NCBI GenBank assembly: GCA_977020255.1
Contig: CDROCS010006906.1
Location: forward strand, 1 to 64,000
DNA length: 64,000 nucleotides
Direction: 5' to 3'
From: Obrimoposthia wandeli
Taxonomy: Eukaryota
The notes beneath the pieces are model-generated. The model worked only from the letters and a program-made list of their open reading frames with translations, was not told the DNA's origin and made no database searches. Below are positions 10,572-54,823 of this stretch, piece by piece (the first letter of the stretch is position 1; each line of letters starts with the position of its first letter). The position numbers and the translations under genes were made by a program.

Positions 10572-10627
10572 AGAATTTGTGTTCTTGTATTCAATGATTA
10601 ACTTTTATTAAACTATTATATAACATT

Positions 10628-11225
10628 GACACTCTTATTTTTAAAATTACATTCATTTGCTAAACCCGCTTACTTGTATTGAAATTCATACTATCAATCA
10701 CTTGCTCGTCATACTTGCATTCAATCTAACTATAATTTATTCAACAAAAACTCTATTTTAATTTACTTATAGTCTAAATTACACTTGCATTCAATCAAAC
10801 TATCGACACTCTTATTTTTAAAATTACATTCACTTGCTAAACCCACTTACTTGTATTGAAATTCATACTATCAATCACTTGCTCGTCATACTTGCATTCA
10901 ATCTAACTATAATTTATTCAACAAAAACTCTATTTTAATTTACTTATAGTCTAAATTACACTTGCATTCAATCAAACTATCGACACTCTTATTTTTAAAA
11001 TTACATTCACTTGCTAAACCTACTTACTTGTATTGAAATTCATACTATCAATCACTTGCTCGTCATACTCGCATTCAATCTAACTATAATTTATTCAACA
11101 AAAACTCTATTTTAATTTACTTATAGTCTAAATTACACTTGCATTCAATAAAACTATCGACACTCTTATTTTAAAATTACATTCACTTGCTAAGACTCTT
11201 ACTTGTAAATGACATTCATACTTGC
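10628..11225. repeat. 177-bp tandem repeat, ~3.4 copies
   Basis: gacactcttattt starts at 10628, 10805, 10982 and 11159 (period 177). The first three copies are near-identical; the fourth is partial and diverged. Confidence 0.95.
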
Positions 11226-11560
11226 ATGCATAATTTTATTCATTTACATTCATTCTACCTCTCATTTTATTCAAACTCTCATTCAAATATTCAAATAAAT
11301 TAATATTTTTACTAATTTTCTATTAATTCCGTTGTAACTTAGTCGTTGAAACGAAAAGAATGTATAAAGAATGGACTTTCTTACTTTGTAAATGTTATTC
11401 ACTTAAGTTTGATGATGATATTATGAAATTACATAATAAATGTGTATAATTTTGTATTATTCTCTGACTTCTTTCTTATTTTATTTTTTATTTTAATATA
11501 TAATTGAAGTTATTTAAAGAAATTTTATCATAATTCTATAAATGTGAAAGCCTAGAAAAA

Positions 11561-11724
11561 ACTTTGATCTAAATTTCACATAAAATAGTATGTATGTGAT
11601 TACGTAATGCATTCATTAACTTATAAGAGTGAACTTTAGCCTAAATTTTCACATAGAATAGTGTGTGTATGATTACGTCATACATTCTTAATTGGTAAGT
11701 GTGAACTTTATCCTAAATTTTCAT
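11561..11724. repeat. 72-bp tandem repeat, ~2.3 copies
   Basis: acttt..cctaaattt(t)ca starts at 11561, 11633 and 11705. The full units carry gattacgtaat and gattacgtcat. Confidence 0.85.
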
Positions 11725-11728
11725 TATG

Positions 11729-12096
11729 GACTAGATCACAAAAAAGAAGGGTGGAGACTAAGCCACTTGATCCTTTGAATTAGTGGTTAGCCAAAAATAA
11801 GGGTGGAGACTAGATCACAAAAAAGAATGGTGGAGACTAGATCACTAAAAGAAGGGTGGAGACTAAGCCACTTGACCCTTTGAATTAGTGGTTAACCAAA
11901 AATAAGGGTGGAGACTAGACCACAAAAAGAAGGGTGGAGACTAGATCACTAAAAGAAGGGTGGAGACTAAGCCAATTGACCCTTTCATAGTGATATATCT
12001 CAAAAAGAAGGGTGGAGACTAAGCCACTTGACCCTTTGAATTATGGACAACCATAGATTATAGCCAAAAGAAGGGTGGAGTCTAGATCACTTGACC
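11729..12096 (+). repeat. GA-rich minisatellite with fixed anchor aagggtggagact and 26/52-bp modules
   Basis: Anchor at 11747, 11799, 11826 (aatggt variant), 11852, 11904, 11930, 11956, 12008 and 12071 (gagtct variant). Spacings are 52, 27, 26, 52, 26, 26, 52, 63. Confidence 0.95.
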
Positions 12097-20400: not shown

Positions 20401-23400
20401 AAAACTCAAATTTCCAATAAACACAAATATCAAAACTAAATTTACGTCAATTTACACTTATTTATAACAACAACGAAATATTTTTAATAGAGTATATCTT
20501 TAAATTAGTCAATTTTTCAAAACCCATACAGGTGAATTTAAAATTGAAAGAAAAAGTTATTTTATACGAATTTATAAATAAATTATTATCTTTTAAAAAA
20601 TACCTAAAAGTTCAATTGTAATGTAAAAATGAAAAAGTACGCACTTTAAAAACGAACGCCAATATATCTGTTTCGTATTTCACTCAAATGCAATTATCCG
20701 TATTGCACACGACATACATAAAATAGCTTAAAATCCTACAATATCCAGGATTTTTTCGACACAAATTCCATGAGAAATTGATCCGACCTTTTCAATAAAA
20801 CGTAACAATAAAAAGTTTAAATATTGATACATTGTAATCAATTGTCAGTAAATCGAGTTAACATAGGGACAGGCATTATCATTATTGTAAATTAATCACA
20901 CTGGCTCAGCTACTAATAAGGTCTGGTTGGCCGATTCGAAATTTGAAGCTGTCAGTCGTATGCGTATGTGCGTTTGTGCAGTTGTTTAGACAAGTGGTCA
21001 TTGAGAATTGTGACTGCAGACGTATGGGGTGCCTGTTTGGGATATATAATAGCCAGAAGATTGTTTCAGTTGATATTGGATATGTGGAGAAATGAAGTGG
21101 ATGTTAAGTTGCATAGATTTTGACGAACAATGTAATATTTCCTTTGAATAGTGAATGAGATGATGTTGAGTTCGAGGCTTTTGGTGTATCGAGAGAATAA
21201 TGCAAAGTTGTGTTATTTGAAATCATGTTCAAATAATCTCGAATTTGAAAACCTTTGCTTGGTAGAATGACGGATTAGCGTTGTCTAGAGAACATTTACT
21301 TTATGTCGTTTTCCTTTTTGCTGGGGCCACTTACAGTCAAAATAGTAAAGTTGTATCATTGTGTTTTACAAATTCATTTAGTTTGGTATGTTTTCTTGCT
21401 TTTTTTCAAGAATTACCTAAAGAAAGCGTTCAGAAGTGTTTAGAATACTGTATAGAATAGTATACGGCATACAAAAGTATTTCATATTAAAATTATTTTG
21501 TTTTAATTGTTAGCATGTAAAGTTTAATTTTATTTCAATTGACCAAATTAGATGGCACACTCGAAATCCAAGCCAAAGATCGACCTGATGGACGTGTCTG
21601 TCAAAATCCAATAAGAGTCTCTTCTTGACACGTTACAAAACATACGTGCTGGAGAAACGTAATTGGACTAGTTTAAGCCGTTGCGGGCTACAGTAATTAT
21701 GTTGGTCAATATCAGTATTGTTTGATCTTTCATCTGGCAAAACTATGCTGCCATTTGTATCGACCAGATTTGTGGAGCCTCTCGTATATAAGAGACGGAG
21801 AGAGGCTCGATGTTTTGAAAAGTGTTTATGTGATTTTAGTTCAATACAAAGTTTGAGGATTTTTTGTTTAATATGCCGAAGAAGCCGCTAAAACAAGATC
21901 TGCTACAAAATCTTAACTATTTATAAACCTGTTCTATATTATATTAGCATTATGACACAATGATACAAGACGTCCCAAATGAATAAATAAATTTTGTTTA
22001 ATAATAGTTATTAAAAATAACAGTTACTGAAATGCACCAATAAACGCATTAACTCATAGGAAACAGTTTTGTAGTTTGAGGGAAATTGTTTATCCCAGTA
22101 GCAACTTTTCCCACCGTTTATAAATTTAATGTTTATCAGTTTCAAGAGTAAATCAAGGAACATTTGAAATTTAAGTTTTGCTTATAAATATTCAATGTTA
22201 TCTCCTCTATTCAATCCCAAAACTGTCAAACTGATTCTGTAATTCAATCCTTGTACCATAAAATCCGAGTTTATTCTGTGTTAATTTCAAATCCCTGTCG
22301 GCCTCTGAATGAGTAGTAGGATACGTTTCTCACATAATGGGCTTCACATAATAATCGATCGTACACAGAACACATCACAGAGAGTCACTGTCCCTCTTCT
22401 AATTTGACCAACTTTGACCAACCAGCCACAGGTCAAAATGGTATGAGAGCGAAGAGAAACCGAAGAGCACGAATGTATAATACTGGGTGTATTATCTATG
22501 GAATTAGTCAGGGAAAATGAAACACACATTGAGTATATGAACCATTATTTTCTAGCCATCCTGTGCACTGACATAAGTGGTCTTGTCACCAAACTTATAA
22601 ACATAGGCATTGTCTCGTGTGTAGCTGTTTTCAGAAGAGCTCGGATAACATTGACAGTTCATGAAAATTTTATCTTTAATTTACATTGAACTACTCTGGT
22701 AAAGATTTTTTTAATGCTTCAGTTGGATTACAATGCAGTATCTTTGCCGAGTGATCAATAAGTCACTTGGGGTAACTAAAACCCATTTATGATAAATAAA
22801 TAACCTAACAAGACTTAAATTATGTCCTCTACGAGACTAGACTAATTGCTGTTGATCAAAAATTGGTGTATGGTTAGCTTGTGGCATTGACAAATGTCTA
22901 GTAGTGGTGGGAAGAGTGATGGGGATGGATAAGCAGAGTTAGGAGAGCGGGTTGAAGAGAGAACAAAGCAGGACAGTTGACCGGAAGCTGTAGCAAGAGT
23001 TGTAGACTCGCTGAACTTTCTGACTGACACTGGAAAAATGTGTTTTGGACAGTGACAGACAAGCAATATTCCAGACTCCCTTCCCCCATTATGGAGCCGA
23101 TATAAGGTTGGGTCACAAGACAGAACGGCCAATCGGGAGTCTAGTGAATATGAATTATTCCTCAAGCAGTTCTGTAAACTTCAATAAAGTTGTAGAACAT
23201 AAAATCTATTAAATCGGAACACTCTTTTATATTACGAAAAAATGTGATGTAATAGTAATATAGAACTCACACATACAAAATCAATCACACACCACATCTA
23301 AGATAAATGTACAAGAACTTTGAGGATATTACTTTTGACGCAAATACAATAGTCTAATGAAATCGTTATAACTTTTAGCGTAAAAGTTCAAGATTGGATT

Positions 23401-32400: not shown

Positions 32401-35400
32401 TATTTAAAACTCCTGTTAAACGAAATATGCAAATAGTTAAAGTATTCCTCAAATAAAAACCGTCTCTCTATTAACACAAAGCTCGGTATATTCAACTATC
32501 TTTAGTTTCTTTTCGGCCGTATATGAATTTATTTAGTTCAAGGTTAATAAAAATTGATTTAATATAACAAATATAATAATTAATGTATACTAATTTTATT
32601 TTGTGTGTCCAGGCTGTATAAAATTAAAAGTAATTTCAAAATGTATGATGATTTGTGAGTGTGCAGGCTTAACCCGGAAATTTAGGATTATCCAAATTAT
32701 AAATGTATGATGTTGATAGATTTTCTCTGGTGCAGAACACTAGATATTATTAGAAATAAAAAGTAGATTAACGCAAGCTTCTTAACAATTATCAATGAAA
32801 ATAATTTTCGATGTATTTATATTTTTTGAATTTTGAACATATTCCAAATTAAAGCTGGGTCGTAAATGTTATCAAATACAGTTGACCCACTTGTTCCAGT
32901 GTTGCTTGGCTAGGCACAGGGCAGGAAGTGTGTAGGGTAGGATAATGTCAATGTTCTTGATGAAAAGCGCCTGGATATGGCTGTTTTGCCACAAATACAG
33001 AGCTCGTTCCGATACCTGTGAGTTATAGAAAGCGATCTCAAATGTATTCTTTTGTACCATTAAGAGCACCACACATTTAAAACAAAAATAGTCAATCATT
33101 GTTGAGGAAAGAGCTTACTTTTATACTTTCATATAGATTGCTATTTCCCTGAAATTATGTACATATATGCATTTTTATAATTTGCAAATAATCCTTTTTG
33201 CTCTAACGTTTTTGCAATATGAATTTACTTTGCAACGATTGTAACCTACCTCAATGGACAACCAACTTGTTTTGTTTAGATTCATAAATGGGTGCAAGAA
33301 ATCCCCTTATTATCTGGACAGCAATGGAAACGCAATGAAGTGGGCAAATAAAAGGTCATTACATCATTAAATCCAAATTGAAAAACCTATTTGAAATAAT
33401 TGATTAATAAAACCGTCGGAAACTAAAGGGATTTTCAGAATAAAATGCAAAATTGTCAGCTAATTTGTTGATTAATTTTTCTAAGCAGATTGATACAATC
33501 TAATTTAGGTAGTGAATAGAAGTATCCATATCAGAAATTGAGAATATAAATAAATTACTCCAATGTATGCGCTTTAAGACAAATCTTTCAAATAAATCAC
33601 GCAATCTTATCATCTCTAAATTTCCGTTTCATGAAAAGCAATTTCAAAATAATAAATATTCAATTCATATCTTCAGCTGCGCTATAAACTTGGGAGAACT
33701 CAATTGAAATTATTGAGTTTCTACAATCTGATATTACTTCATTTTTAGGAAATATGTATTGTACGTAACACAACTTTAAAATCACATAAAATATATTTAC
33801 CATGGATATTCCTTCTGAAAAGTTGAATGTTTTGTTTTATTACATAAATTTGTAAAGAGAAAATGGTTCAGAAATTTTTACAATGAATAATGATGCAGAA
33901 GAACTGTTACAATTTCAAAAAACAACTTATGATCAATAGTATTTTTAAAGAAATCAACTCAAAACTTAAGGAGGAAGAATTACAATTCTACTGGCTCTGA
34001 TATTTTATATGCGGGCTGTTCTAACTGAATCTCAATCTGAGTAGTATGAATAATATAAACCACTGTTTGTAATATGGGAAGGAATTATTATTAACTTTTT
34101 TAAAATCATTTTTCACATGAATTAAATTATCTCTCAAAAGTGACGGTCAATAATAAATAGCCAAAATAATTTAAAAATCAAGTCTTTCATGAAATTGATT
34201 TCTGATGGAATAAAAGATAATTTTCTCGTAAAAAAATATAAAAGCAGACTGGAAAATTTGAAATATAAACTGAAATACTAGACAAAAGACTGAAGATTTT
34301 TTTTTCTTAAATCACACAAGCGAACATGTGAATTTTGAAAAAATCTGTATATATCTAATGAAAAAAGAATTATTTAGAAAAATTAAAATAATGATATATA
34401 AAGACAGATAATATTTGATAATGTCATTTATAAGAAAAATCAAAGACAAAATTGAATAAAGTTATCAATTAACACTTGTTTAAAATGTTTTCACATGATT
34501 ATTAAGATATCTTTAAATACATTACCTTGATTAGAAGAATAACATGACCTTGCACAAAATAGTGACTTTATTTTCGTTCCTCGAGCTCTTATCTGAAAAT
34601 ACTTCTAAGGGAACACTCAATTCCCTTAGGGAGAGTTAGGCAGCCTGAACCTATTTTGAAGACCTTTCTATTGAAAAAAATGACTCAAAATTTGACTTAA
34701 TTGACTGTTAAATAACCTGTTGAGATTTGATATTATCGGGTTATGAAATGTTTCAACAAAAAAACTGGATTTTAATACTCAAACCCAGATGTTTTCCTGA
34801 TATGTTGAAGTCGATTTGATCAAGGACATAATATATGATCCAGATGCAAAGTTTGAAAAGAATCTGAAATTATTGTATTCTCCATTAGACATTGTTTTAA
34901 AATAAAGTATGCAAGCAGTTTAGGAAAAAACATTACAGTATACCAACAGTTTTGTCACTACACCCTTGAATAAGCACATTTAATAAACTGCATCAAAAAA
35001 TGAATTATTAACTCGATTTTTTGAGAGTTTATAAAGTAAATAATCACTCGGTAAATAAATCCACAGAGTTTAAATAAAGTATTCATTTTATAAAAAGATA
35101 ACTAACCTGAAAATGTTGAGAACCTATGCATCTGGCCAGCTGTATAGAGATTGGTTTAATGATTGGGCGTACTGTGTCAGAGAATCCAAGCTCCAGTACC
35201 TCCTCAAGCTCGTTGAGGAAGAGGATCTCCTTCAAACTGACAGTCTTCGGCCAGAACTTTAAGAGACCTTCTAAGACAACCTACACGAAAGTTATAGGTT
35301 CAGATACGTCTTTATGTGACTTTAGAAAATGAATTAAATTGCAAGATATAAAATCTGGGGATTTAGGTTGGAATTACTAAAGATGTATCACTTAGATTAA

Positions 35401-38400: not shown

Positions 38401-41400
38401 CGTTAGAGTGAGTAATTTTTATATAATAAAAAATACAGGTTACATCACATACAATACCTTCTTTGTGTGTGACTGTATGGGTTTATCTTAATATCACTGA
38501 TGATTTGAGGTATCATCGTTGATTTGAAAATTTGCATGCCTTAACCTATATTAAGTTTATTCAGTTTTATAATTTTATTTTTAATTTTATATAGCTGATG
38601 CACAACTTTGACAAGTATAATTGTTGAGTAGAGTCGAACTATATACACAATCACACATGCTTTAAACATCCAAGCACTTTAAAGTGCATAAACTTTCCGC
38701 CTGATTGGTCAAATTGAAATCATATTTGAAACTTAACTAATTAAACAACAATTAGTTATCGAAGGTAATAAATATTAGATTTATTAGATAATAGCACTCT
38801 ATTAAATAGATTATTTCAACAACATCGTCGTTGTAGGTAACAAGCCACTAACAGTCAAATCCCAATACAACGAAACCCTCGGTATAAGGATCACCGCTTT
38901 GGGAGTAAAGTTAGTTTACTGAAGTGTTGTAAAACTTAGATAATGCGAGTGACAAATGAGAAAAAAGGTTTTAGTTATCTAAAAGTTATCTGCAATTACA
39001 CTAGCCTGGTAAATAAGTCTGGCAAAAAACGTGGCATCCTTCAAAGTAAATGTGTGATTACGCAACAGCTCAAATATTAAACTGGGCCAGGAATCTAAAA
39101 TAAGCAGACAATAATTTCTGCAACTCAGCCTTTCACTTATCATTCTATTGAATTTCAAATGAAATCTCGATATGAAATATCACGAAACGATTGGCTCAGT
39201 CCATTGAATTTCGTTATATTATTTGAATTATTTGAACACTGTACTTAAATATTAGGTGATTATTTTATCTGATTCTGAATCATTATGTTTCAGGAAAACA
39301 AACTTGAATATCAGTCTGGCTTTAATTGTATGCTCTGTATTTTTGAATTCTTTATATTTCGTTTTATCGAAGTGGAAATCACAAATCTTCTTCAAATTTA
39401 CTAAATATTCCCAAAAATAATTGGCTGGAATATTGTAAAAATATCAGTTCTCCTATAAACAAATAAAAAGAACGATTAAATTTTGATATTATTATATTAA
39501 TTAAATATTGTATTTTTCAAAGTTATATAAATTTTTACATTAAAATTTTGAAATGAAATAAAATCTACTTAATGTAGTCATTTTCGTGTAAAGTAAGTCG
39601 ATAAAAAGAACCCTCAAAAATTATTGAAGATGAAACAATTGTCTAGAAATACTTATTTTTAATCAATAGTAATTAATAATTTCAATTTTAAAAACGTGGT
39701 TACTTTTATTACAGTGTTAACTTAAACAAACAAATCATGATAGAAAAATACTAATAACTTTTAAATATAATGAATACGGAGAGCAAAAATGTTGCTGACG
39801 AAGTTGTTTAAAATCCAATGTTAGACTTTTAATATAATGTGTTAATATATAATTATCGTTTTTAATAATATAAATGAGAAAATAATGTTTTATCTATATA
39901 TATTTGTTTTCTATTATAAAAGTAAATACATCGATATTTTAGATGTTTACCACAATAGCGATTTTTTAGTTACGACCTTCTTTTGTGGATTTTAGTAGAT
40001 AGTACTATAAGTTATAATGTATGCTTATTGGTTTATTGATGCTGACAGGCAATCGAGAATCTATTCCCTAGTATACCTAATATGCAAATTCATAAACTCA
40101 TCAAATAAAATCACAACAAAAAATGCTATAATCTTTATGTTTCTATCTTCAAGAACTCCTCTTGTTGAAATTAATTATTTAATATAGTCTTAATTGTTCA
40201 AGAAGACTAAACACAAATTTAGTTCCAATACCAGCAATATTTTTCCGAAAAATTGAAGTAATGAGATGGTGATAGTTTTAATTTAGTTGAATATCAATTC
40301 ACAATTCAGTTATGGTTCTTGTTGAAATTTGGAATTAAGAAAATATATCGATTAATTCAATCGTAAATTGTCATACAAGTTTAAAAATATTTTCAAAACT
40401 TTTACATTTGTGAAAAAGAATATTGTTGCAAGATTTGAGCACTTTGTCAAGCACCTATTTGCTTTTCAGAGTTCTAAATATCGAGGCTGTGAGATTTGAA
40501 TTTTAGCAACAAAAAGAGAGCATATCATATATAAAAAAATCTCAAATAACAAATAGAGTGATGGAATATTTGAAATTTAGGCTCCGAATCTTTACAGCAA
40601 TATTTAAAGATTCGAGAAGCAGCCGAAGACATTAGTATTCAGAAAATATTACGAAGAAAAATGTAAAACGGGAAGCACTTCTAAGTAATAAATCATAGAA
40701 TTATTAGATATTAGCGCTATATTAAAGTTTTTATTGTTAATTAACTAAAATCAAACAAACATATTTGATTTGATAAAATAATATGTCATACAAAGTAAAA
40801 TGGATTTAATAAAACTAAAATTTAAGACAAAAAATTTGAAAAATTTCAAATAAATCGAGAAGAAAGAAATGTATTCAGCCTTTGCACCGAAGGTTTACAA
40901 CATGCTGCTTCAGAAATTAAAGAGTCATAGATAAATAAGAATATTGCAGCTGTTTGATATGTGCGCTTTAAATACATATCCACCTATGTATTAAATAGAA
41001 CAACGAATTTCTGATATGTTAAATATTTTATCTTAGAGGTTTACAATGACGAAACATTTTTGTAGTATGGGATGAAAACAATTGATAAAGATCCGTATGA
41101 CCCCGAAATTAAAGAAGCTATAATGTTACAAATATAATTTTCCATGTTTAACTTAGCTGTATTTACGCTGATTCTCACAGATTCGTAGTAAATGTGAAAT
41201 CCAATATCCATTCCAATGGAATGCTGAGGAATCAACCTAGCAGCAGCATATTTAATTAGTGGAATAATGCAAATATATCGTGAAGAAGAGAATCGATAAC
41301 TGCTCATATTGATCAACCACTAATGTGATAGACAGAAAACTCGTGTTTGCAGCAGGTTACAACAACAAAGATGTGGTACAAATGATATTTTACACCATTG

Positions 41401-44400: not shown

Positions 44401-47400
44401 TAATTTCATATTAAATAGAGTCAAACTTCTTAAGCCAGTCAAGCCGATTTTACCGTAATTTTTAAAATATCTATTCGATAAATGAGGTCAAATAATCCAT
44501 TACAGTTGACCAGGTATTTCAAGATATGCCCGATGCTTCCTCTGGAGATGAACATGGCGACTACTAATTAGCGAACCGATGCTGCGACATATTTACAGGT
44601 GCAATAAAGCAGTCTCATCTGGTGAAAATATACTCAACCTTTCTATGAGTGATTTGGATAGATTCATTGATCTTAAATATGCACGTGGGACATTGAGCAA
44701 CACGGGACCACCTGATCGAGGCCCTTGGAATACAAAATGGAATCGTGACATTTCCCCAAATTCTGTGTTTCGTGATAAATTTGTCTCAATCTTAACTCAT
44801 TTTCGCTCTGATGGAGAGTGTATAACAAATCTATTCTGACATCTGATACATGGCCCGAAGTGCTACAAGTCACACGAATTTTGTCTGTTGACGAACTGTT
44901 GTAGCTTTATTCAATATAACTCAAACAAACCATATAAATTAATTTACTCTCATTATCTACAACACTTCTAAGTATTTATGTTTTGATTACTCATATTTAA
45001 GAAAAGATAACAGTCTTCCGATTAATGAACCATTAGCTCATTACACGGTGAAAAACTTAACTGATGATAATGTTCTCTCATCAATATCAGTTGGGAATTT
45101 TTTGAGTCAAATAAATATTTCCTACCACAGTACTTGATGGAAAAAATATTCTTCTTTATTCATCATCAAAAGTCTTTTCATCAATTCGAACTTATCTCGT
45201 CACTAACATTACGTCATATTACCATAACTGACGACAACACAATATAGCCGGGCACTCACACGCAAACCCACACACTTGCACTGTAAAGTGCAACAAATCT
45301 TCGGCATCCAATTGGCCAATTTGAAACTACTAATAAGCAATCAATTATCAACATTACTTTTTGACAAATAGCCGTGACTTACACATTCTTCCGAGTTTGG
45401 CCCTACAAGGTTAATAGGACCAGATTTATTGAAATTGTCAGCTCATTGATAAGGAATCAGCCAGTTTTTTAATAACCCTAAACAGACGCTCTTCACTGTT
45501 TAAGTTTATAAAAAAACAAAGTGTAAGTCGATTGTTTGAACAAAATTACTAGATTGTACACAACACAGCGTACTTGTAAATTCTGACCCGTATATGCTTT
45601 CTACAATGTCCTTAACATGGTGGCCATAAATATATACGCATGGATTGTATACAAGGAAACACTAAGCATCAACATCACACGGCAAAGTATCATGTTGGCT
45701 CTTTTTGAGAAATTTTGCAGATCAGGAGGCATGACAGCACATGGCAACAATTCAGGCTCCTCGTCCAATAGACTAAAGCGACGACATTTTTTGAATTAAA
45801 AATAGCTAGAATGTTTATAATGATATTTACAGATAATATATTTCTATGATAAAAATCGATTTAAAATGTAATAAAAGAAAACCAGTGAATCCGGCATTGA
45901 GGTGTTAACAAACTTTGAAATACACTGATTTTATCTAAAATAAATGAAAATTTCTTACCGAAATTATGAGGTATATCTGATAGTGACAATGTCAATGTGC
46001 CTATGATGAAATACTTACGACTTTGAGGAGGGCTTTGTCCTTTTTGATGAACTCTGTGACACAGTAGGCTAATGGGGGCTGAAAGACGGCCAGGGATTTG
46101 ACTTTGTGCAGAGGCAAGAGGACACGCCGTAGGAAGACTTTGTGTTCCTCTTTCAGAGGCACCTGGAACCCGTTTATGATGCTGCACGAGGATGATCGCG
46201 GAGTGTTGACCTTATCCAGTGCTTGTGGGTGTTGAAATGGGAGGAAGCGGATGTGTAAGGTTTTAAATGCTCTATTTAGTGAATGTGTAATAGGCAAAAT
46301 ACTGCAAATCTCAAATTAAGAAGTGTAAAAATCAACTAAAGAACAATTTGACTTGAAAGAGCTCTAAATATTCTACTAGACTGTGAATAATGTTTGATCT
46401 GATTTCTTTAGTATACTAATTACAAAGAAAGTGTTGACTGATGAATCATGATGAGCAATTAAAAATAGAGAGTTGAGAGAGAAGACAAAATTAGCCGTAT
46501 GAATTTTATTGTGGAGAAAAGGAATATGATGAGATATCAAAGATGTCAAGAAAAGACAAAGTCAGGCAGAAGACAAAAGAGATAGTGTGGATTAGTATTC
46601 CTGATAAGATATGGATGGGGGTGTTTGAAATATTGAGTACTGCATCGTTTTCCATTGACTGATCAAGNNNNNNNNNNNNNNNNNNNNNNNNNNNNNNNNN
46701 NNNNNNNNNNNNNNNNNNNNNNNNNNNNNNNNNNNNNNNNNNNNNNNNNNNNNNNNNNNNNNNNNNNNNNNNNNNNNNNNNNNNNNNNNNNNNNNNNNNN
46801 NNNNNNNNNNNNNNNNNNNNNNNNNNNNNNNNNNNNNNNNNNNNNNNNNNNNNNNNNNNNNNNNNNNNNNNNNNNNNNNNNNNNNNNNNNNNNNNNNNNA
46901 ACACTCAATATTCACCTGCCCAATATCTCCAACAATTCGTTTGTGCCCTTGAAATTCTCGTCTTCGTAGATTTGTCTAAATGCAAAGGAAAATAAAAAAA
47001 TTTAACAGATGCAAAGCCAATAACGGGACAGCACACACCTAATTATAGAGGTAGGGAGTACTCTTTCTGGAGTCTTGAAGTAGCATTATCAGCATCTAAC
47101 AACTTCCCAACAACTACGGGAGAAGGTGAGGGGAAAGTGTGGTGTCGCGAGAAAAATTGAACACAACCAAAGATAATTACATCGATTGTACTCTGAAGTT
47201 TGCATACACATAATTTCTTTAACAATAAACCAAGATAAAATAAACACAATGGGTCGCTTTGAAATTTTAACGTTGTAATCTGATGAATGGAATTATCGCA
47301 AATTCTACTCGCTGATTTTGTGGCATAAACATTGATAACCAATTATCGATTTTGTCTCACAATCGAACAGTGACAAAGTGCTCTAAATTTTAGAGCACTT

Positions 47401-50055
47401 ATAAAACTTTCATCCTTTTTTTAAATAATTTTTAAAAACTTTATTGTTTTAAATTTATTTATAAATAAATATTTTCTCAGATAAATTTTATTTTTGAACA
47501 TAATAGTTTAATAATCAAAACACAAATTGTTATTTTATTTTGGCTTTTGTTTATATATTTTACATGTTATTGTATAATGTATTGTGTAGTTAAATCCAAG
47601 ATGGTGTGAAGAACGATATATTCAAATTCTGCCGTTTTAGGGATTGTCGAATATTAAAACAAACATCCAACAACATATTGTATATTTTTTATTATATTAT
47701 GTATGTAAAATTTAATCTAAATAAAAAAATTATAAAACAATAAAATTTTTAATTAAATCAAACAGGACTAAAACTGTAAGGTCCTTTATGAGCATGGAAT
47801 CTGTGGTTTGAACTGGGTGAAGACATGAAACTGCAGCTCCGGTATCGACTAAACATTTTATATTATTTTTGGATAAATAAATATTATTTACGGAGCACCG
47901 CAAGGAATAAGGCGTTTCTGTGATGACTAGACGCCTGAAAGTTTAAATCTTGTTTCCATTGGCATTTATCTCCGTTTTCCAATACTTTGCATTTCGTAGC
48001 TCGTTCTTTAAACTTTGTGTGGTACCAACAAAACTTCGTAACTCTATCTGTATTGGGGATTATATAATTGTTATCATACTTAGACATTAATAGGAGTAAA
48101 TTATTGAACAATTTCGTACAACCGCAGTATTTATATCGCCTGGGGTTTAACTAAACTATTCGAAATTTTAATCTCAGTCGCATTGCCATACTTTTTAGCA
48201 TACCTCCTTGTCTCAAATTTTCGTTTATTAGGAATATATTTTCGGGTCATCTTTGCATCGAAATTCGAATCCATTGGAACAAAATATTACAATTTACAAC
48301 TTCTATTTATAGCGCATTAAACTCGGCCTCGTTGGTGGCAAAAATTCAATTTTCTGCTCACTGCAAGACACATAACCGCCTATAACCGGAGGCTTGGCTT
48401 AGTTAATCAATCACCCCATCCCACCATTGTCGACGCAACATAAACGCCGACAATCCCCCAAGACACCGCTCGTCTCCTCATGAATAGCTTAAGAGTACAT
48501 GAATAAACGTATCTTTCAGTCGCTAAAACCAGTCTCTGCAAATTTGATAAAGTCATCCTAACAAATTCAGAATTAACCTTAATAAAGAGGTAAATAAAGA
48601 GGATTTTGTGTAAAATTATATTTTAAATCCTCACGAAATGCTAAAATGTCTGACCGAAACAAAATTAATTAAAAATAACTAGTATATAACATGAATTGAG
48701 AATTTTACATGAGTTCGGCTTATAAACAAAAACTTAGGGTAAATTACTTTCTCTGCTATTCACACAATCGAATCAAATCAAACACTTAAAATATAGAGAT
48801 ATCCAACAATGAGACGTCCATCACGGACCATTTCTAACGACAGTCACATATACACTCACAGCAAATAACAACCGTACTCAAAATCACCCCTGAAGTGACG
48901 CCAACATAAAACTATATATCACGAATATAAAATTTATGGTTGTTTCAAATTTATATTCATTTCATCAATATTTACTCGTTATAAACCAATACAAAGCTTC
49001 GCACAACACTGGTAACTAAATAAATCTATTTTGATTATTTGTTACGTAGGTACTCTAATATATAAACATTGATTTCAAAATCATCTATTTATTCAAACAA
49101 ATTATATCCTTGGTACATGACTTTGAACTGAGAATCTTATGCACTGATTAATTTATTGAGCATTAATAATAATATTTGGAAATAAATGTATTTTATTTAA
49201 CATTATCAACAAAAATAATTTATTTAATATAGCATCAATATCTGATAACTTTATGATGTATTACTTCAAAGCGCTTTCTGTTTTCCATTATTCTTAATAA
49301 TTTCTGAATAGTAAACTCTAGGGTTGCTTTTTGAATTTTTCAGCATTTATACAGTTTTATGTATTCATCGGTAGTTTTTTGTAAAGATTTGAGGCATAAA
49401 TTTTAAATATTCTATCTGTTTGTATTTTGAACATTTCTTAATTAATATGCAGTCATCATCGTTTCTCCAAAGACTCGAGAAAATCATGTAAATATTTATG
49501 TTTTTGTGAGAGAATACATTTTTTGTTACGAAGTAGGACTTGGAATTCAATTCGGGCATTGATCGTAGCCAATAAATGATCACTTGTACAAGCACTTTTT
49601 TTAATTTGAAAATAATTCTGTTGGCTTTGTTTAACATTTTTGCAAGCGATTTAATTGATAAGCTGTAATATTAAACAATAAAGAATTTTGATAATCAAGT
49701 ATTGATGTAATGATCACGTGAAATTTCTTTGCAGTTATCTCAGTAGTTAGATATTTCTTATTAGATAAATGTTTCCAACTCACATAAACTATCCTCATTT
49801 ATTGATTTTGGTGTTACCATGTGGGACGTACCGAAAGAAGAAATAGTTGATTTGCTTGCGAATGAAGAAGCGCTGGTTGATCATCTTGCCGTAGACCCGA
49901 TGAATTATAGTTTTGAGATAGTCTCTCTCTCGAGGATCCTCGCTGTCGAAAAGATCCATGACGTAGCTTATAAAGGTATTCTCGATGTGTGGTCGAGCCA
50001 GGCTCGCATTGAACTCCGGGTGCTCAAGAAACCGCAGGAACACCTCGTACACATA
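14273..50055 (-). CDS. PPP2R5: PP2A regulatory subunit B'/B56 family gene, eight exons, 5' part missing (join complement 50055-49832, 46975-46916, 46181-46019, 35280-35107, 33015-32891, 27216-27115, 18326-18158, 14476-14273)
   Basis: All modelled introns are GT-AG and phases chain correctly (0/2/2/0/0/2/2/0). The exons sum to 1221 nt = 406 aa plus TGA. The product carries B56 hallmark motifs [50 protein letters not shown] and HWNK. Confidence 0.95.
14720..14880 (-). mobile_element. pogo-like transposase N-terminal DNA-binding remnant
   Basis: Minus frame reads [28 protein letters not shown], resembling the pogo BrkDBD pattern Y.A.FKLKVIEYAE..GNRAA.R.F.V.E. Confidence 0.55.
16304..17715 (+). 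mobile_element. Tc1/mariner-superfamily element with ~185-bp TIRs and TA TSD; dead transposase
   Basis: TA|caactagaaaatg at 16302-16304 and cattttctagttg|TA at 17715-17717. The arms align to about 16487 and 17532. An inner direct repeat of the end motif sits near 17498. Transposase remnants read [23 protein letters not shown] and [24 protein letters not shown]. Confidence 0.9.
18158..18326 (-). CDS. PPP2R5: B56 exon ([25 protein letters not shown]...KWSSPQ)
   Basis: Acceptor cttcttgtcgacag, donor gtgaat, 169 bp, phase 2 to 0. [19 protein letters not shown] aligns with the B56 C-terminal helix (EREEAW.KIE.LA..NPQY pattern). Confidence 0.85.
18765..20660 (+). mobile_element. Ginger/KRBA2-SCAND3-like integrase element remnant with long inverted arms
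   Basis: Plus-strand fragments: AHQACEHGG...CRNC (HHCC), [43 protein letters not shown], and a Cys-rich tail [19 protein letters not shown]. About 18765-19025 is a diverged reverse complement of about 20400-20660. Boundaries are approximate. Confidence 0.8.
22842..23165 (-). mobile_element. Probable non-LTR (Jockey/CR1-like) ORF2 3'-end remnant
   Basis: [17 protein letters not shown]...SLFP loosely matches the RR.VASL..FYR..HG.CS...SFFPRT..LWN tail of LINE ORF2. The match is weak. Confidence 0.35.
26690..27000 (+). mobile_element. Tc1-like transposase C-terminal remnant
   Basis: [27 protein letters not shown], then [11 protein letters not shown]...[11 protein letters not shown], match the Tc1 IFMQD and SMPRR motifs. 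Confidence 0.65.
27115..27216 (-). CDS. PPP2R5: B56 exon ([34 protein letters not shown]), absent from the ORF track in this frame
   Basis: Acceptor cttccttcag, donor gtgagt, 102 bp, phase 2 to 2. Confidence 0.94.
28600..29050 (+). mobile_element. pogo/Tigger transposase remnant
   Basis: ILDNAPVH at 28632-28655 and a downstream VIEAW; frames are disrupted. Confidence 0.5.
31060..31440 (-). mobile_element. mariner-like (maT/rosa-type) transposase remnant
   Basis: AYLKETFG...IISR..NWPARTP, then LDYLFW...[18 protein letters not shown], match WPPRSPDLTPLDFFLWG..K..VY...P.TI.ELK. Confidence 0.75.
32190..32530 (-). mobile_element. Internally deleted pogo-like remnant
   Basis: N-terminal [14 protein letters not shown] near 32500 and C-terminal [17 protein letters not shown] near 32250. 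Confidence 0.55.
32891..33015 (-). CDS. PPP2R5: B56 exon ([18 protein letters not shown]...LAKQHWN-K)
   Basis: Acceptor actcacag, donor gtgggt, 125 bp, phase 0 to 2. Confidence 0.93.
35107..35280 (-). CDS. PPP2R5: B56 exon ([30 protein letters not shown]...[10 protein letters not shown]), absent from the ORF track in this frame
   Basis: Acceptor ttcgtgtag, donor gttagt, 174 bp, phase 0 to 0. Confidence 0.95.
35400..36100 (-). mobile_element. Probable L2/CR1 LINE remnant
   Basis: [13 protein letters not shown] resembles the L.LN..KT.LL.F motif after the RT domain. The sequence is highly decayed. Confidence 0.35.
40500..40700 (+). mobile_element. L2/CR1 LINE 3'-end remnant, same family as 51650-51855
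   Basis: It shares gaatatttgaa.ttta.gctccgaatctttaca and the downstream tail with the copy near 51690, which reads APNLYNKLP...EKFKKQLK. Confidence 0.6.
42190..42560 (-). mobile_element. mariner-like (maT/rosa-type) transposase remnant
   Basis: [16 protein letters not shown] and [16 protein letters not shown] match GRWIGRGGP..WPPRSPDLTP with a deletion. Confidence 0.65.
44560..45414 (+). mobile_element. piggyBac-like transposase remnant
   Basis: [13 protein letters not shown]...WNTKWNRDI...[15 protein letters not shown] and LSVDELL (~44880) match piggyBac motifs. The right end reads ...ctacaagg|TTAA at 45411-45414. Confidence 0.7.
46019..46181 (-). CDS. PPP2R5: B56 exon ([30 protein letters not shown]...KDKALLKV)
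   Basis: Acceptor ctcgtgcag, donor gtaagt, 163 bp, phase 2 to 0. Confidence 0.95.
46668..46899. other. Assembly gap (232 N)
   Basis: Run of N. The four ORF-track entries spanning it are artefacts. Confidence 1.
46916..46975 (-). CDS. PPP2R5: B56 60-bp exon ([20 protein letters not shown]), absent from the ORF track
   Basis: Acceptor tttgcatttag, donor gtgaat, phase 2 to 2. It lies 16 bp from the N gap. Confidence 0.93.
47043..47342 (-). mobile_element. CR1/L2 LINE 3'-end remnant
   Basis: FFSR...PSPVVV...NATSRL resembles FFS.RVV..WN.LP..VV.A....FK.RL. Confidence 0.45.
47800..48400 (-). mobile_element. Ty3/Gypsy gag-protease remnant
   Basis: [15 protein letters not shown] matches the CWYH..FG..A.KC gag motif. 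It is followed by [12 protein letters not shown] (aspartic protease DTGA) at about 47820-47858. Confidence 0.8.
48602..49101 (+). repeat. Left arm of ~500-bp inverted repeat pair flanking a B56 exon
   Basis: Reverse complement of 50389-51205 once the MITE is removed. For example, aaccgtactcaaaatcacccctgaa.tgacgccaacataaaactatatatcacgaatataa matches its mirror at about 50575-50640. The core is roughly 85-90% identical by eye. Confidence 0.93.
49832..50055 (-). CDS. PPP2R5: B56 exon ([11 protein letters not shown]...[21 protein letters not shown]...[10 protein letters not shown])
   Basis: Acceptor ttgtgcag, donor gtacgt, 224 bp, phase 0 to 2. Confidence 0.95.
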
Positions 50056-50388
50056 CTGCACAAGAACAATCCTCAATATCAGAGAAGAGATATGTAAAAT
50101 ATAGTTAAACTAAATGAGGGAAAAAGGGAAACAAAAAAGTTTTCATAAATTTTAAAATGTATCAACCATATTTGTTTGTAAGAAAATCCAACTTCTAATT
50201 TTTAGCAGATTTTATGCATATCACTTTCAACATTCTTTATACAGTATTATTTTGAGTCTGGAAACTTTTTAAATGATTATAATTTATAAACGACAAAATA
50301 TTTATTTCTAAATATTATTAATAATGCTCAATAACTATTCAGCGCATGGAATAATTGGTTCAACGTCATAGAAAAATAAAGTAGTTAC

Positions 50389-51205
50389 TTTGTTTGAATA
50401 ATAAGATCATTTTGAAATCAATGTTTTTTATAATAAAGTACCTACGTAACAAAAAATCAAATATATATTTATTTATCTACCAGTTTTGTGCGAAACTTTG
50501 TGTTGATTCATAACTTGAGTAAATATTGATCTTTTTCATCGATAAATGTGAATATAAATTTGAAACAACCATAAATATTATATTCGTGATATATAGTTTT
50601 ATGTTGGCGTCATTTCAGGGGTGATTTTGAGTACGGTTGTTATTTGCTGAGAGTGTATATGTAATTGTGTCGATAGAAATGGTCCTTGATGGACGTCTAA
50701 TTGTTGGATATCTCTATATTTTAAGTGTCTGATTTGATTCTATTATGTGAATAGATGAGAAAGTAATTTACCCTAATTTTTTATTTATAAACCGAACTCA
50801 TGTAAAATTTGCAGATCAAATATCATGGTATCATAGACCAGGAGTTCCCAAACATTTTACCGCGGAACCTTTGGTATTATTTAAAAAATATTGGAAGCCC
50901 TACCTATTTAAAAATACTTAAAATCATAAAGTGAAAAATGAATAAAAAATTTAAAGTTAAACTAATGAAGAATTTATTAAGTAGTTATAGTGGGCCTATG
51001 CCCTGGTAAGTAGAGGCGAGTAGCGTTAATGCCAATTTAGTAAATTTATTTTTATTAAATGTCGGCTTGAGAAACCCCTGATTTTGTCTACGGAATCTTC
51101 TTTGGAAACTCCTGCCATAGACTAATTATTTACAATGAAATATGGTTAGGTCAGATATTTTAGCATGTCATGTGAGGATTTGAAAATATTATTTTACACT
51201 AAATC
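50389..51205 (-). repeat. Right arm of the inverted repeat pair, interrupted by a hAT MITE
   Basis: Mirror alignment to 48602-49101 holds on both sides of the 50839-51114 insertion. Confidence 0.9.
50839..51114. mobile_element. hAT-family MITE, 276 bp
   Basis: TIRs caggagttcccaaac and tttggaaactcctg, with an 8-bp TSD tcatagac (50831-50838) / ccatagac (51115-51122). Confidence 0.9.
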
Positions 51206-51649
51206 TGGACGTGTAACAAAACTATCAATCCCAGCAATTAGATGAACAATGATGAGCAAGCAGTCAATGTGATTGAAAATTATGATAAACGATAACCAGC
51301 TCACTGGACATGATTTCTCTTTATTTTGCCTTAATTAAGCATAATATATTGCCCACATGTTCATCAAATAAATCGATATTTCTCCCAAAAGTCCTATGTG
51401 GAAAACGTTAAATTTGTTTGTGTTTTAGCAGAGTTCAACACATGACAGTTTCAGCCACTGAAAGTGAATAAAACATAACTTGTTACAGCGATTTGACTAC
51501 CGATAAATGCTATAATTGAATTCAAGATTTTACTTATTTTCTAAAAAGGTAATCTCTCACAAAACCCCAAATCTTTATTTGATTATTTCGTGTCTGATGC
51601 AGAGAGCATGTATATGAATCTTAGGAGCAACGATGATGACAGCAGATTA

Positions 51650-51855
51650 ATTAAGAAATGATAAAATAACAAACAGAGTAATAGAATATTTGAAGTTTAC
51701 GCTCCGAATCTTTACAACAAACTACCGAAGAGACTGTAATAATATAGAAAAATTCAAAAAGCAACTGAAAAGTTTACAAATCAAAAAATATTAAGAAGAG
51801 AAATGGAAAATATAGAACGCGTTTTAGTAACAAATCATGGATACATTAGATATTA
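51650..51855 (+). mobile_element. L2/CR1 LINE 3'-end remnant
   Basis: APNLYNKLPKRL and, after a frameshift, IEKFKKQLK. Confidence 0.6.
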
Positions 51856-54139
51856 GGGTTATATTAGGTATATTATTGTTATTATATTATTAATGCTACA
51901 AAATTTTCAAATTGTACTATAACATTATTAATGCAGTTGAAAGCGGAAAACATAAGTTGATTATGACAATAACGTGTGAGTTCTGCAGTGGGTTTAAATC
52001 GATAATTGTTCCGCCAATTTTTGGAGCTTTTTGAAGCAATGAAACAATGCAAATATTCAGTCTGATATGTTGTGGCCAATATCAGGGTGACTACTAATGT
52101 CTCTCCACTGGGTGACATGCGTTCCAACAATTGTCTTCACACTGAAATCAAAATATCGATCAAGAAACCAAAATGTAGATGTTTAGAATCCAGTAAAATG
52201 CAAATTTAATTTGTAACCTGTGAAATATTAGACTTTGTATTTTGAACACAACAATATAGCCTACAGTTTTATTCCCTAAAATAATCAGTACCATAAACCT
52301 TTGAAAATGTTATTTTATTAAATTTTAATTTTTTGTTAGAATTTATTTATATTTAAATTACATCGTCCCATTTTTAAAACCCTTAAAAAAAGAGCTCGAT
52401 TGTGGACATGTCATGGAAAGTATTTTTCTAGATTTCAAAACATTTCGTACTCAACAACAGGGATACAAATAATCATGGTTGAACAGCAGTTAAATGATAT
52501 TTCCAGCAATTCTTTGATGACAGAAGCAAGTTTTGAACATGCCGATTAATATCGTGCCAATGAGTTTATCATAGACTATTGGACGAAAACATGCTTTGCA
52601 AAAAAACAGCTAAGCAAGACAAGAATCATCGAGACAAACAACCAGACAGAGATAGACAAGAAGAAGCAAGCAGTAAGCTGCTCTTTAGCGTATATGAATA
52701 TCTTATTTGTGTTGTGTTTAACTGCCCTACACACCTTTAAGAACTGGTTTACCATATACTCGGGTTGTTTTACTTTCCGTTTTCTAGTATTCGACACTAC
52801 AAAAAACTCCCTGGATCTTTTGTATCTCAAACTGAAAAAGATGAAAATGTTGACTTGAAAAACTCTACCGAGTCTATGAATATAGTGAAAACTGGACATG
52901 ACAACTAGAAAGTGTTGAACCAAATGTTTGATGGGGAATAACACACCAAACATATATAGAAACTTCAACAATCTGAGAGGTTTTCTCAAAACGACATAGA
53001 AATGATTCTGAGAGATGAGGCTCAAAAATTAGCTAGTTCAGCAAAGCCTTAAACGCTAGGGCGAAAACCACTGACACAAATTTTATTCCTGATGATATCT
53101 TCCCAAACTCAAAGCTTCCAGCACAGACAAAAAGCTTGAACGATATCTAGACTCGCTATTATTTTTGTGGCTGGGAAACGAGTAGAGATATTGTCATTTT
53201 AATTTTTCATTTCAATTTTAATTCATTTAAAAGTTCAAATTATCTTCAGAAATAAGAATTCCATAGTTACCAAGTACTACTTTAAGTGTTTTAATTTTAT
53301 TTTTGAGGGCTCTTCATGAATCTGACATCGGTTTTGCTTCATCGCGTCTATATTTAAGTTCAAACAAGTTCGAATGTTACCCTGATGCCGAAATAAAATC
53401 TGTCCTAAGCGGCAACTCACACTAGAATCATCGGTAGCGGTGCCGACGTACTCACAAATATATAATTGTAAGTACGACGTACAATAATCAGTAACACATG
53501 TTCTACCAGTTGAAATATTAAAAGGCACTCAAACAGGTAATACCAATGTATTCTAACGGGAACGAACCCCTAGTTACTCAATTGAAAATTGAAGAGAATG
53601 GAGAAACCCTTCCAGTAACACTTCATTTAAACTAAGACTCCAGTTTTGACAAGACAAATTAAAGTTATAATTTATATAAATCGAGGTCATGCAAAAAATT
53701 CGCTTTTGTAAAAATTATTATGTCGCTTTCTGTTGCAAAACAAATAACAAAATAAATTTGGTCGAATAAATTTACTATTTTACTGTATAAAAATTAGTGA
53801 TTAAATTTTTTAAAAATTAGTGATTCAATTTTTAAAAAATATTATTACTAAGTTTTAAAGCCACAAAGATATTGTAAGTTGCAGTATCAGTGTTATTATT
53901 TCCAAAACATACTTTTCAATGTTTTATCGATTACAATCGTTCAAATTCACATTTAAGTATAAATAACGGGTATAAAATTATTAATAGAAAATTAAAATAA
54001 TATTATAAATTATGTTTCATTTGTTAATCACAAGATACTCATTGCCAAAAAAACTCATTCGCCCCTAAGGATAATATGTTTACTAAACAGTGTAAACAAC
54101 ATAAAAACAATAAATAAAAGATTGCTAATAATGTGTATG

Positions 54140-54823
54140 GCCATCAGGAGGTTAATAAAGAGATCGTGCTGGCCAAGGTAACAATGCAATCTTGTGTGTC
54201 TGAAAGGTTATTCTTGCAACACGACTCATATGTCGTCCTGCCTTGTCGCGTGTTGAAAAATTAAATGGTTTTCGTGAACAATATTATTATTTCTTCTACA
54301 TATTGCTCAGCATTAAGATTCCCATTATTGCAATCGTCGCCCTTCCTTCATACTAGTAACTTCCCCAAATCATCACACTTCTGTCGCTGTATTGATCGTG
54401 CTCAGCAATACAACGCTCAAAAAATCTCTGCTGGCAAGCTTTTCCATAATTTTTATCTATCATAAATCGTGATTCACCAGACCACATCACTCCCTTCCAG
54501 AAATATTTTGGTATTGTTATAAAATTTTCGCCCCATTGTAGACTTGTAGACGGAGAGCTTTGTGTTGAAAACATAATTCGTTGAAGTGGTCTGTAGCTCT
54601 TGTATCCACAACATAGGGCTCTTCTATAAGCTGTTCTTATTGAGCAAGGAAGTTGGTTACCTGGATAATTGCTCCTTATTATTCGTGGAAACGATGAAAA
54701 CGATTTTTTAAAACATAAATTATAAATCTCTTGTCGTTTAGCTTTGTTCCTTCGTGTGGTCCGTCGTTTCTTAGTTTTATGTTGACATTTCTCTTCACCA
54801 TTTTCGAACTGTATTTCGATCAC
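54140..54823 (-). mobile_element. Tc1 transposase remnant
   Basis: ORF 54353-54823 contains FWKGVMWSGESRF (W..V.WSDESRF) and SVMIWG; downstream LLPWPARS (WPARSPDLNPIE). Confidence 0.85.

What the first reader, a model, noticed from the sequence alone, without database searches (positions are those of the whole stretch)
48602..51205. A frame-shifting B56 exon is enclosed by a ~500-bp inverted repeat pair
The arms (48602-49101 and 50389-51205) are mirror copies with matching ends, lying 730 bp and 333 bp from the 224-bp exon that encodes DSEDPRERD and HRVYGK. In the pre-mRNA they could form a long duplex looping out this exon. That geometry is known to promote back-splicing to circRNA, exon skipping and ADAR editing. 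Skipping 224 nt would shift the frame, giving a possible built-in off switch. Alternatively the arms are long TIRs, or two copies acting as a composite transposon around a host exon. A hAT MITE later inserted in one arm, so the pair predates it. No third copy was noticed in the window.
Basis: partly seen in the sequence, partly recalled or inferred. Interest (0 to 1): 0.7.

Follow-up and report, generated by a model that had tools for sequence, protein, structure and literature searches.

The report
Unique inverted duplication flanking a B56 exon
A 224-base exon of a PP2A-B56 gene sits between two about 600-base mirror-image copies of intron DNA found nowhere else in this 1.35-Gb genome; this layout is known to favour circular RNA and exon skipping, but here the copies look like a neutrally decaying accident and no RNA data could be reached.

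Summary
Arm A is 48602-49196. Arm A' is 50290-51205 and is interrupted by a 276-bp hAT MITE at 50839-51114. With the MITE removed, the arms are 88% identical over aligned bases. They flank the 224-nt minus-strand B56 exon (49832-50055), 635 nt beyond its donor and 234 nt before its acceptor.

The arm is not a high-copy repeat. In the 1.35-Gb assembly it matches only itself and its partner. It has no target-site duplication, terminal repeats, ORF, tRNA or Rfam match. Two other inverted pairs in the window are the ends of multi-copy long-TIR transposons. I therefore read A/A' as a locus-specific inverted duplication of intron DNA.

In the sense pre-mRNA, 522 of 604 A bases pair with A' in the predicted fold (net about -472 kcal/mol), and no competing partner exists in the window. 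The geometry does favour back-splicing and frame-shifting exon skipping.

Nothing shows selection for pairing. Mismatches are 51 transversions, 17 G.U and 13 A.C, with 18 gap events. One central tract is about 95% identical and remains unexplained.

The function is untested: a good candidate of a known kind.

The parts
48602..49196 (-). Arm A. It lies in the intron downstream of the exon (gene on the minus strand), 635 nt beyond the 5' splice site. It is one of only two copies in the genome.
   Evidence: alignment to A'. (no other genomic copy). (no ORF of 35 aa or more, no tRNA, no Rfam match).
48700..48750 (.). A piece of about 50 bp inside arm A (and its mirror at 50758-50810) that resembles the terminal about 45 bp of a small unrelated repeat family. 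This suggests the arm is ordinary composite intron DNA.
   Evidence: Eight genomic loci match only this piece, and their mutual homology ends at its right edge.
48739..48962 (.). Central tract of the arms with about 95% identity, against about 77% near the inner end. It may be a gene-conversion tract or a constrained duplex core. It holds the longest perfect complementary runs (36, 35, 29 and 26 bp).
   Evidence: 5 differences in 123 columns against 17% overall; post-hoc P = 7e-6.. No unusual self-fold.
49213..49774 (+). Repeat B, a copy of a high-copy repeat of about 560 bp. It lies 17 bp from arm A's inner end and 57 bp from the exon's donor site. By divergence it is older than the A/A' duplication.
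   Evidence: 6893 first-look candidates, about 72% identity. (family ends). (JC 0.16 to consensus).
49832..50055 (-). The enclosed 224-nt B56 (PP2A regulatory subunit) exon, covering Pfam positions about 110-185, with canonical splice sites. Skipping it shifts the reading frame.
50290..51205 (-). Arm A', the reverse complement of A. It lies in the upstream intron of about 14.5 kb, 234 nt before the 3' splice site, and is interrupted by the MITE.
50839..51114 (.). hAT-type MITE of 276 bp inserted in A' after the duplication. Its 8-bp TSD is 50831-50838 / 51115-51122.
   Evidence: (JC 0.059 to consensus, younger than the arm divergence of 0.072 per lineage).
51493..51934 (-). Repeat B', an inverted copy of the B family in the upstream intron. 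With B it forms a second, weak (69-75%) inverted pair around the exon.
46916..46975 (-). The next B56 exon (60 nt, ...[19 protein letters not shown]...). It would be the acceptor for an exon-skipping splice. An N run (46668-46899) begins 17 bp beyond its donor and was not filled.

Best explanation
A segment of about 600 bp of ordinary intron DNA of a B56 (PP2A regulatory subunit) gene was copied once, in inverted orientation, to the other side of a 224-nt exon. This is a locus-specific inverted duplication, not a pair of transposon copies. Since then the two copies have decayed much as neutral DNA does, and one was hit by a hAT MITE. Because both copies lie in the introns flanking one exon, the sense pre-mRNA can form an imperfect duplex of about 520 bp that loops out the exon with its splice sites. 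By the established mechanism of complementary-sequence-mediated exon circularization, this should raise the rate of back-splicing to a 224-nt circle and of frame-shifting exon skipping. It should also make the introns a target for dsRNA-binding enzymes. I take these RNA outcomes to be a tolerated by-product rather than a selected switch. Shown here: the structure, its uniqueness in the genome, the order of insertions, the predicted pairing, and the lack of wobble bias. Inferred: the duplication mechanism and all RNA outcomes.
For:: the 610-bp arm finds only itself and its partner (E = 8.7e-157) in 1.35 Gb. The other 8 hits cover only a piece of about 45 bp. One search repeats this for the inner 508 bp. 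The same tool recovers families at 72-77% identity, so sensitivity is adequate; the outer ends are sharp, with no TSD around either arm or around the whole unit, and no TIRs within an arm; no ORF, tRNA or Rfam match; the arm contains a terminal scrap of another repeat family, as expected for old intron DNA; the two other inverted pairs in the window are the ends of multi-copy long-TIR transposons (469 and 63 first-look candidates), which is what a TE pair looks like here; 51 transversions, 17 G.U and 13 A.C mismatches (P = 0.58) and 18 gap events, a neutral pattern; divergence ordering B (0.16) > A/A' (0.072 per lineage) > MITE (0.059); 522 of 604 A bases pair with A' in the MFE fold of the 2.7-kb sense RNA, with a net gain of about -472 kcal/mol; perfect runs of 36, 35, 29, 26 and 20 bp; no competing copy of A, A' or the MITE elsewhere in window 12.3-64 kb; an intact exon with canonical splice sites in correct order within an apparently intact gene. 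Mechanism from the literature: deleting flanking reverse-complementary matches abolishes both the circle and the skipped transcript in C. elegans zip-2 (PMC8330042). Sry and Alu pairs, and ADAR antagonism, are reviewed in PMC6769675.
Against: There are no RNA data, so no back-splice, skipping, editing or small-RNA evidence for or against. The central tract 48739-48962 is about 95% identical against about 77% at the inner end. Uniform neutral decay does not predict this, so it needs gene conversion or constraint. Sharp ends and a genome full of long-TIR DNA transposons leave room for a nearly extinct TE that hopped locally. The genome search scores only first-look candidates and skips very common words, so very diverged copies (below about 65-70%) could be missed. 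Age estimates rest on consensuses built from 9-11 copies that were chosen as best hits to the window copy.
Confidence: 0.6

Rival explanations
1. The arms are two copies of a very low-copy, now inactive, non-autonomous transposon. It inserted on both sides of the exon by local hopping, or the copies acted as a composite pair. Any RNA effect is again incidental.
For: Both copies share sharp outer ends. The genome carries several DNA-transposon families with long TIRs and many MITEs. Cut-and-paste elements often reinsert nearby (general knowledge).
Against: Only two copies exist in 1.35 Gb, whereas every real TE tested here had 63 to more than 6000 candidates. There is no TSD, no terminal inverted repeat and no coding remnant. 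The arm contains a scrap of another family rather than having that family's ends. A composite element cannot explain a host exon sitting in its correct gene order.
Confidence: 0.22
2. One reading: the inverted pair is a maintained regulatory device. Duplex formation in the pre-mRNA switches the gene between productive splicing and a circRNA or frame-shifted skipped product. ADAR or helicases would tune it.
For: The geometry is close to ideal. The partner is unique, there are no competitors, perfect runs reach 36 bp, the arms lie 234 and 635 nt from the splice sites, and the upstream intron is about 14.5 kb. The central tract is about 95% identical, unexpectedly well kept. Precedents include mouse Sry and conserved RCMs in zip-2 (PMC6769675, PMC8330042).
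Against: Mismatches show no excess of G.U over A.C, transversions dominate, there are 18 indel events, and a MITE sits inside one arm. The high-identity tract is equally explained by gene conversion between nearby inverted repeats. No expression or conservation data exist.
Confidence: 0.07
3. Assembly artefact: a fold-back or chimeric read produced a false local inverted duplication.
For: Long-read assemblies can contain palindromic artefacts (general knowledge).
Against: Artefactual palindromes are near-identical and symmetric about a point. These arms differ at about 12% of aligned bases with 18 indels. One arm carries a TSD-flanked MITE and the other abuts repeat B. They enclose 1.1 kb of asymmetric unique sequence with an intact exon.
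Confidence: 0.02

Closest known systems
Mouse Sry: a single exon flanked by a long locus-specific inverted repeat that drives circular transcripts (Capel 1993 and Dubin 1995, as summarised in PMC6769675)
   Same: A single exon lies between arms of a locus-specific inverted duplication rather than copies of a dispersed repeat. The arms lie in the sequence flanking the splice sites and can loop the exon out.
   Different: The Sry arms are described there as about 15,000 nt and almost perfectly complementary, and the circle is about 1.2 kb. Here the arms are about 600 nt at 88% identity and the exon is 224 nt. Circularization of Sry is shown experimentally; nothing is shown here.
Inverted Alu pairs (IRAlus) and other reverse-complementary matches flanking circRNA exons in human, mouse and C. 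elegans (PMC6769675; PMC8330042)
   Same: Complementary sequences sit in the two flanking introns in opposite orientation. Across-exon pairing is predicted to promote back-splicing and exon skipping. Such duplexes are ADAR substrates.
   Different: Those pairs are mostly copies of high-copy repeats with many possible competing partners. Here the arm has exactly one partner in the genome. The weaker B/B' pair around the same exon is the true analogue of an Alu pair.
Long-TIR non-autonomous DNA transposons of this same genome (window 16296-17723 and 18762-20658)
   Same: Inverted arms of 200-260 bp are separated by 1.0-1.4 kb, giving a similar look in a dot plot.
   Different: Those are multi-copy families whose whole length, interior included, recurs across the genome. 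The A/A' unit recurs nowhere, and its interior is a host exon.
Hairpin-RNA (hpRNA) endo-siRNA loci of Drosophila (general knowledge, not checked in a paper here)
   Same: Inverted duplication of several hundred bp is transcribed as one RNA that can fold into a long duplex.
   Different: hpRNA arms derive from, and target, other genes. Here the arms have no other copy to target, the duplex is only 88% matched, and it is intronic.

Membership tests
Exon flanked by intronic reverse-complementary sequences (circRNA-promoting architecture) | Complementary sequences in inverted orientation, one in each intron flanking the exon | tested here: met
   about 600-bp arms, 88% identical, 234 nt upstream and 635 nt downstream of the exon.
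Exon flanked by intronic reverse-complementary sequences (circRNA-promoting architecture) | Across-exon pairing is thermodynamically favoured and not out-competed by within-intron partners | tested here: met
   522 of 604 arm bases pair with the partner in the MFE fold; no other copy in window 12.3-64 kb; none in the genome. The last 0.5 kb of the upstream intron lies outside the window.
Exon flanked by intronic reverse-complementary sequences (circRNA-promoting architecture) | Enclosed exon has functional canonical splice sites | tested here: met
   ...ttgtgcag|TATGTG and TTTCG|gtacgt. The reading frame continues into exon 46916-46975.
Exon flanked by intronic reverse-complementary sequences (circRNA-promoting architecture) | A back-splice junction (and/or skipped transcript) is actually produced | not testable with these tools
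Transposable element with long TIRs / composite transposon | Multiple dispersed copies in the genome | tested here: not met
   only the two arms. Real TE families in the same window give 63 to 6893 candidates.
Transposable element with long TIRs / composite transposon | Target-site duplication at the ends of each arm or of the whole unit | tested here: not met
   the flanks are ...AAATAAAGAG|A...A'|TGGACGTGTA.... The inner flanks are ATTTAACATT and GTCGTTTATA, which share no direct repeat. A short TSD could have decayed at 12-13% divergence.
hAT-superfamily MITE (the insertion in arm A') | Short TIRs, 8-bp TSD, many non-coding copies | tested here: met
   CAGGGGTTCCCAAAC-type TIRs. The 8-bp TSD is perfect in three of the family copies examined and 7 of 8 in the window copy. 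There are at least 1432 candidates.
B56 / PP2A regulatory subunit B' (Pfam PF01603) | Match to the family profile above the curated cut-off, exons in collinear order | tested here: met
   exons on this contig cover profile positions 1-113, 110-185, 205-261, 256-321 and 313-364, all above the cut-off. supplies the 60-nt exon for positions about 185-205.
hpRNA / endo-siRNA-generating inverted repeat | Small RNAs of 21-22 nt mapping to both arms, and a trans target | not testable with these tools
   No small-RNA data could be reached. Searches show that no other genomic copy exists that could serve as a target.

The most novel reading that the evidence does not exclude
The inverted duplication is kept (its about 220-bp core held at about 95% identity by selection or conversion) as an Sry-like, non-transposon RNA device. 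It diverts transcripts of a divergent B56 paralog into a 224-nt circRNA or a frame-shifted skipped mRNA. This would give a dsRNA-sensitive (ADAR- or helicase-tunable) dosage control of a PP2A regulatory subunit.
Probability: 0.07. Interest if true: 0.6.

Novelty: new member of a known kind. Interest (0 to 1): 0.3.

Why it matters
Most known exon-flanking complementary pairs are copies of dispersed repeats. They have many alternative partners, which makes cause and effect hard to isolate. Here the arm has a single partner in the whole genome, encloses one short frame-shifting exon, and has no competitor. It is therefore a clean natural test case: deleting one arm, or a simple divergent-primer RT-PCR, would show how far one inverted duplication redirects splicing of a PP2A-B56 gene. 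As it stands it is a structural curiosity of a familiar kind with no evidence of function.

Tried and rejected
I did not try again, and read laying was unusable without run ids.

I therefore could not measure a genome-wide rate of non-TE inverted pairs.

3. Relatives in metagenome contigs. The best B56 matches to the exon peptide are only 49-62% identical, so there is no close relative and no orthologous introns.

4. Earlier scan notes held nothing on this locus. Entries labelled 'same genome' include bacteria, so I did not rely on them.

5. Long TIRs or a composite transposon: rejected on copy number and the lack of a TSD.

6. The idea that arm A is the 5' part of repeat B. Some B copies seemed to extend into A. 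The multiple alignment and a dedicated search place the family's 5' end at about 49213, and the apparent overlap is AT-rich noise.

7. A structured RNA or small-RNA gene inside the arms: no Rfam or tRNA hit, and fold z-scores are -0.85 and -0.5.

8. Selection for pairing, tested by wobble bias: negative.

9. The large protein searches were not used. Pfam already identifies the protein, and no tool remained to fetch genomic context of relatives.

10. The spliced protein model was not joined. Exons were handled one by one by reference, and the N run 46668-46899 was left as it is.
Full report
**Observation**

The repeat finder and BLAST both recover an inverted pair around the exon. A gapped alignment shows that the homology runs from 48602 to about 49196 on the left. 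On the right it runs from 51205 down to about 50290.

The right arm is interrupted by 284 bp: a 276-bp element (50839-51114) plus one copy of its 8-bp target duplication.
- With that insertion removed, the arms align with 523 matches, 71 mismatches and 39 gap columns. That is 88% identity over aligned bases.
- The arms therefore sit 635 nt beyond the donor and 234 nt before the acceptor.

The exon is 49832-50055 on the minus strand. It is 224 nt long, so skipping it shifts the frame.
- It has an AG acceptor and a GT donor and encodes ...[21 protein letters not shown]....
- The other two sense frames contain stops, so a 224-nt circle could not carry an endless reading frame.

**The gene**

A whole-genome six-frame search with Pfam B56 (PF01603) finds five B56 loci in the 1.35-Gb assembly. 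On this contig the exons are collinear on the minus strand:

| Exon coordinates | Pfam profile positions |
|---|---|
| 64539-64868 (just outside the window) | 1-113 |
| 49832-50055 | 110-185 |
| 46016-46186 | 205-261 |
| 35095-35292 | 256-321 |
| 32878-33030 | 313-364 |

- The missing positions, about 185-205, are a 60-nt exon at 46916-46975. It has canonical splice sites and a continuous frame.
- The enclosed exon is therefore the gene's own, in its proper place. The upstream intron is about 14.5 kb and the downstream intron is 2.86 kb.
- The N run 46668-46899, which begins 17 bp beyond the 60-nt exon's donor, was left untouched.
- The exon peptide is at most 62% identical to any B56 found in metagenome contigs, so this is a divergent paralog or lineage.

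The 610-bp arm matches only itself and its partner in the whole assembly (E = 8.7e-157). The eight other hits cover only about 45 bp, at 48700-48750. A second search with the inner 508 bp gives the same result. Its extra hits touch only the last about 50-90 bp, where repeat B begins.

The tool is sensitive enough for this conclusion, because it recovered every real repeat I tested:

| Sequence tested | First-look candidates | Identity |
|---|---|---|
| Repeat B (49213-49774) | 6893 | about 72% |
| MITE | 1432 | 80-86% |
| Element 16296-17723 | 469 | – |
| Element 18762-20658 | 63 | – |

The last two are the other inverted pairs in the window. Each is a multi-copy non-autonomous element whose whole length recurs, bounded by TIRs of 200-260 bp. 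That is what a transposon pair looks like in this genome, and A/A' does not look like that.

**What the arm is**

The arm has none of the marks of a mobile element or an RNA gene:
- There is no ORF of 35 aa or more, no tRNA and no Rfam match at E up to 0.1.
- There are no terminal inverted repeats.
- No target-site duplication surrounds either arm or the whole unit.
- The piece of about 45 bp that does recur is the terminal scrap of a small unrelated family. The mutual homology of those loci stops at its edge.

I conclude that the arm is ordinary, partly TE-derived intron DNA that was duplicated once, locally and in inverted orientation. The mechanism cannot be resolved from one genome. It could be a replication template switch or break repair.

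A nearly extinct transposon that hopped locally remains possible, at about one in five. The arms' differences, the MITE and the asymmetric interior exclude an assembly fold-back.

**Order of events**

Divergence from small family consensuses gives this order:
- Repeat B: about 0.16 substitutions per site.
- A/A': 0.144 pairwise, or 0.072 per lineage.
- MITE: 0.059.

These figures are rough. They come from 9-11 copies that were chosen as best hits.

The MITE is a genuine hAT type. It has CAGGGGTTCCCAAAC-type TIRs, and three of the family copies examined carry perfect 8-bp TSDs.

B lies only 17 bp from A's inner boundary. An apparent extension of B-family homology into A proved to be AT-rich noise.

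**Predicted RNA behaviour**

- In the minimum-free-energy fold of the 2.7-kb sense RNA, 522 of 604 A bases pair with A'.
- The arm-arm duplex gains about -472 kcal/mol over the arms folded alone.
- Perfect complementary runs reach 36, 35, 29, 26 and 20 bp.
- Neither A, A' nor the MITE has another copy in window 12.3-64 kb.
- The only additional pairing is B with B' (69-75%), which also spans the exon, and B with a fragment at 40520-40735.

Published experiments show that such flanking complementarity promotes both back-splicing and skipping of the enclosed exon. ADAR antagonises the process (PMC8330042; review PMC6769675, which also summarises the Sry precedent).

Whether the duplex forms in time is a kinetic question. 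A' is transcribed first, and A follows about 860 nt after the acceptor. This step is inference.

**Test for selection**

On the sense RNA the 81 mismatches in the slightly wider alignment comprise 51 transversions, 17 G.U and 13 A.C (binomial P = 0.58). There are also 18 gap events. This gives no sign that pairing is preserved.

The one irregularity is the identity profile. The tract 48739-48962 is about 95% identical, while the inner end is about 77%. Five differences in 123 columns gives a post-hoc P of 7e-6. Gene conversion between close inverted repeats would explain it, and so would a constrained duplex core. The tract has no unusual fold of its own.

**What could not be done**

- No close relative exists in the metagenome collection.

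As a result, none of the following could be tested: circRNA, skipping, editing, small RNAs, polymorphism and conservation.

**Verdict**

The structure is real, specific and unique in the genome, so it is not a chance meeting of common repeats. It belongs to a well-known kind, an exon flanked by complementary intron sequences. Mouse Sry is the nearest precedent for a non-transposon pair. The evidence favours a neutral local duplication whose RNA effects, if any, are by-products. The regulatory-switch reading is not excluded but has no support beyond geometry.

Noticed in passing
window 1-10500: A complex AT-rich satellite (17% GC) fills the first 10.5 kb, with nested unit spacings of about 101, 134, 250 and 463-480 bp. 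It is followed by 177-bp and about 52/104-bp arrays at 10625-12084.
   Followed up: no
window 16296-17723: A non-autonomous element of about 1.43 kb with TIRs of about 200 bp and at least 469 first-look genomic candidates. On contig C3832 eight copies recur every about 11 kb, so the element is embedded there in a large tandem repeat.
   Followed up: partly
window 18762-20658: A second long-TIR element (about 1.9 kb, TIRs of about 260 bp) with 63 first-look candidates. Its copies are patchy and rearranged.
   Followed up: partly
window 49213-49774, 51493-51934, 40520-40735: A repeat family of about 560 bp with at least 6893 first-look candidates at about 72% identity. Three copies lie in introns of this one gene. 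Its class was not determined (no poly-A, no clear TIR). The copy next to the exon ends 57 bp from the donor site and starts 17 bp from arm A's boundary, a proximity that may or may not be chance.
   Followed up: partly
window 48739-48962 and 50544-50771: The middle of the arm pair is much better conserved (about 95%) than its ends (about 77-85%). It could be a gene-conversion tract or a constraint; this is unresolved.
   Followed up: partly
window 46668-46899: A 232-base N run begins 17 bp beyond the donor of the 60-nt B56 exon (46916-46975).
   Followed up: no
window 54353-54823 (minus strand): A 156-aa ORF whose end (...WSGESRFMIDKNYG...SVMIWGSY) looks to me like a decayed Tc1/mariner transposase remnant. 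It lies in the upstream intron. This is recognition from memory and was not tested.
   Followed up: no
G000 contigs C1844, C407, C2676, C2743, C6906: The genome carries five B56 loci. The exon studied here is at most 62% identical to any B56 in the metagenome collection, so this copy is unusually divergent in a normally well-conserved region.
   Followed up: partly
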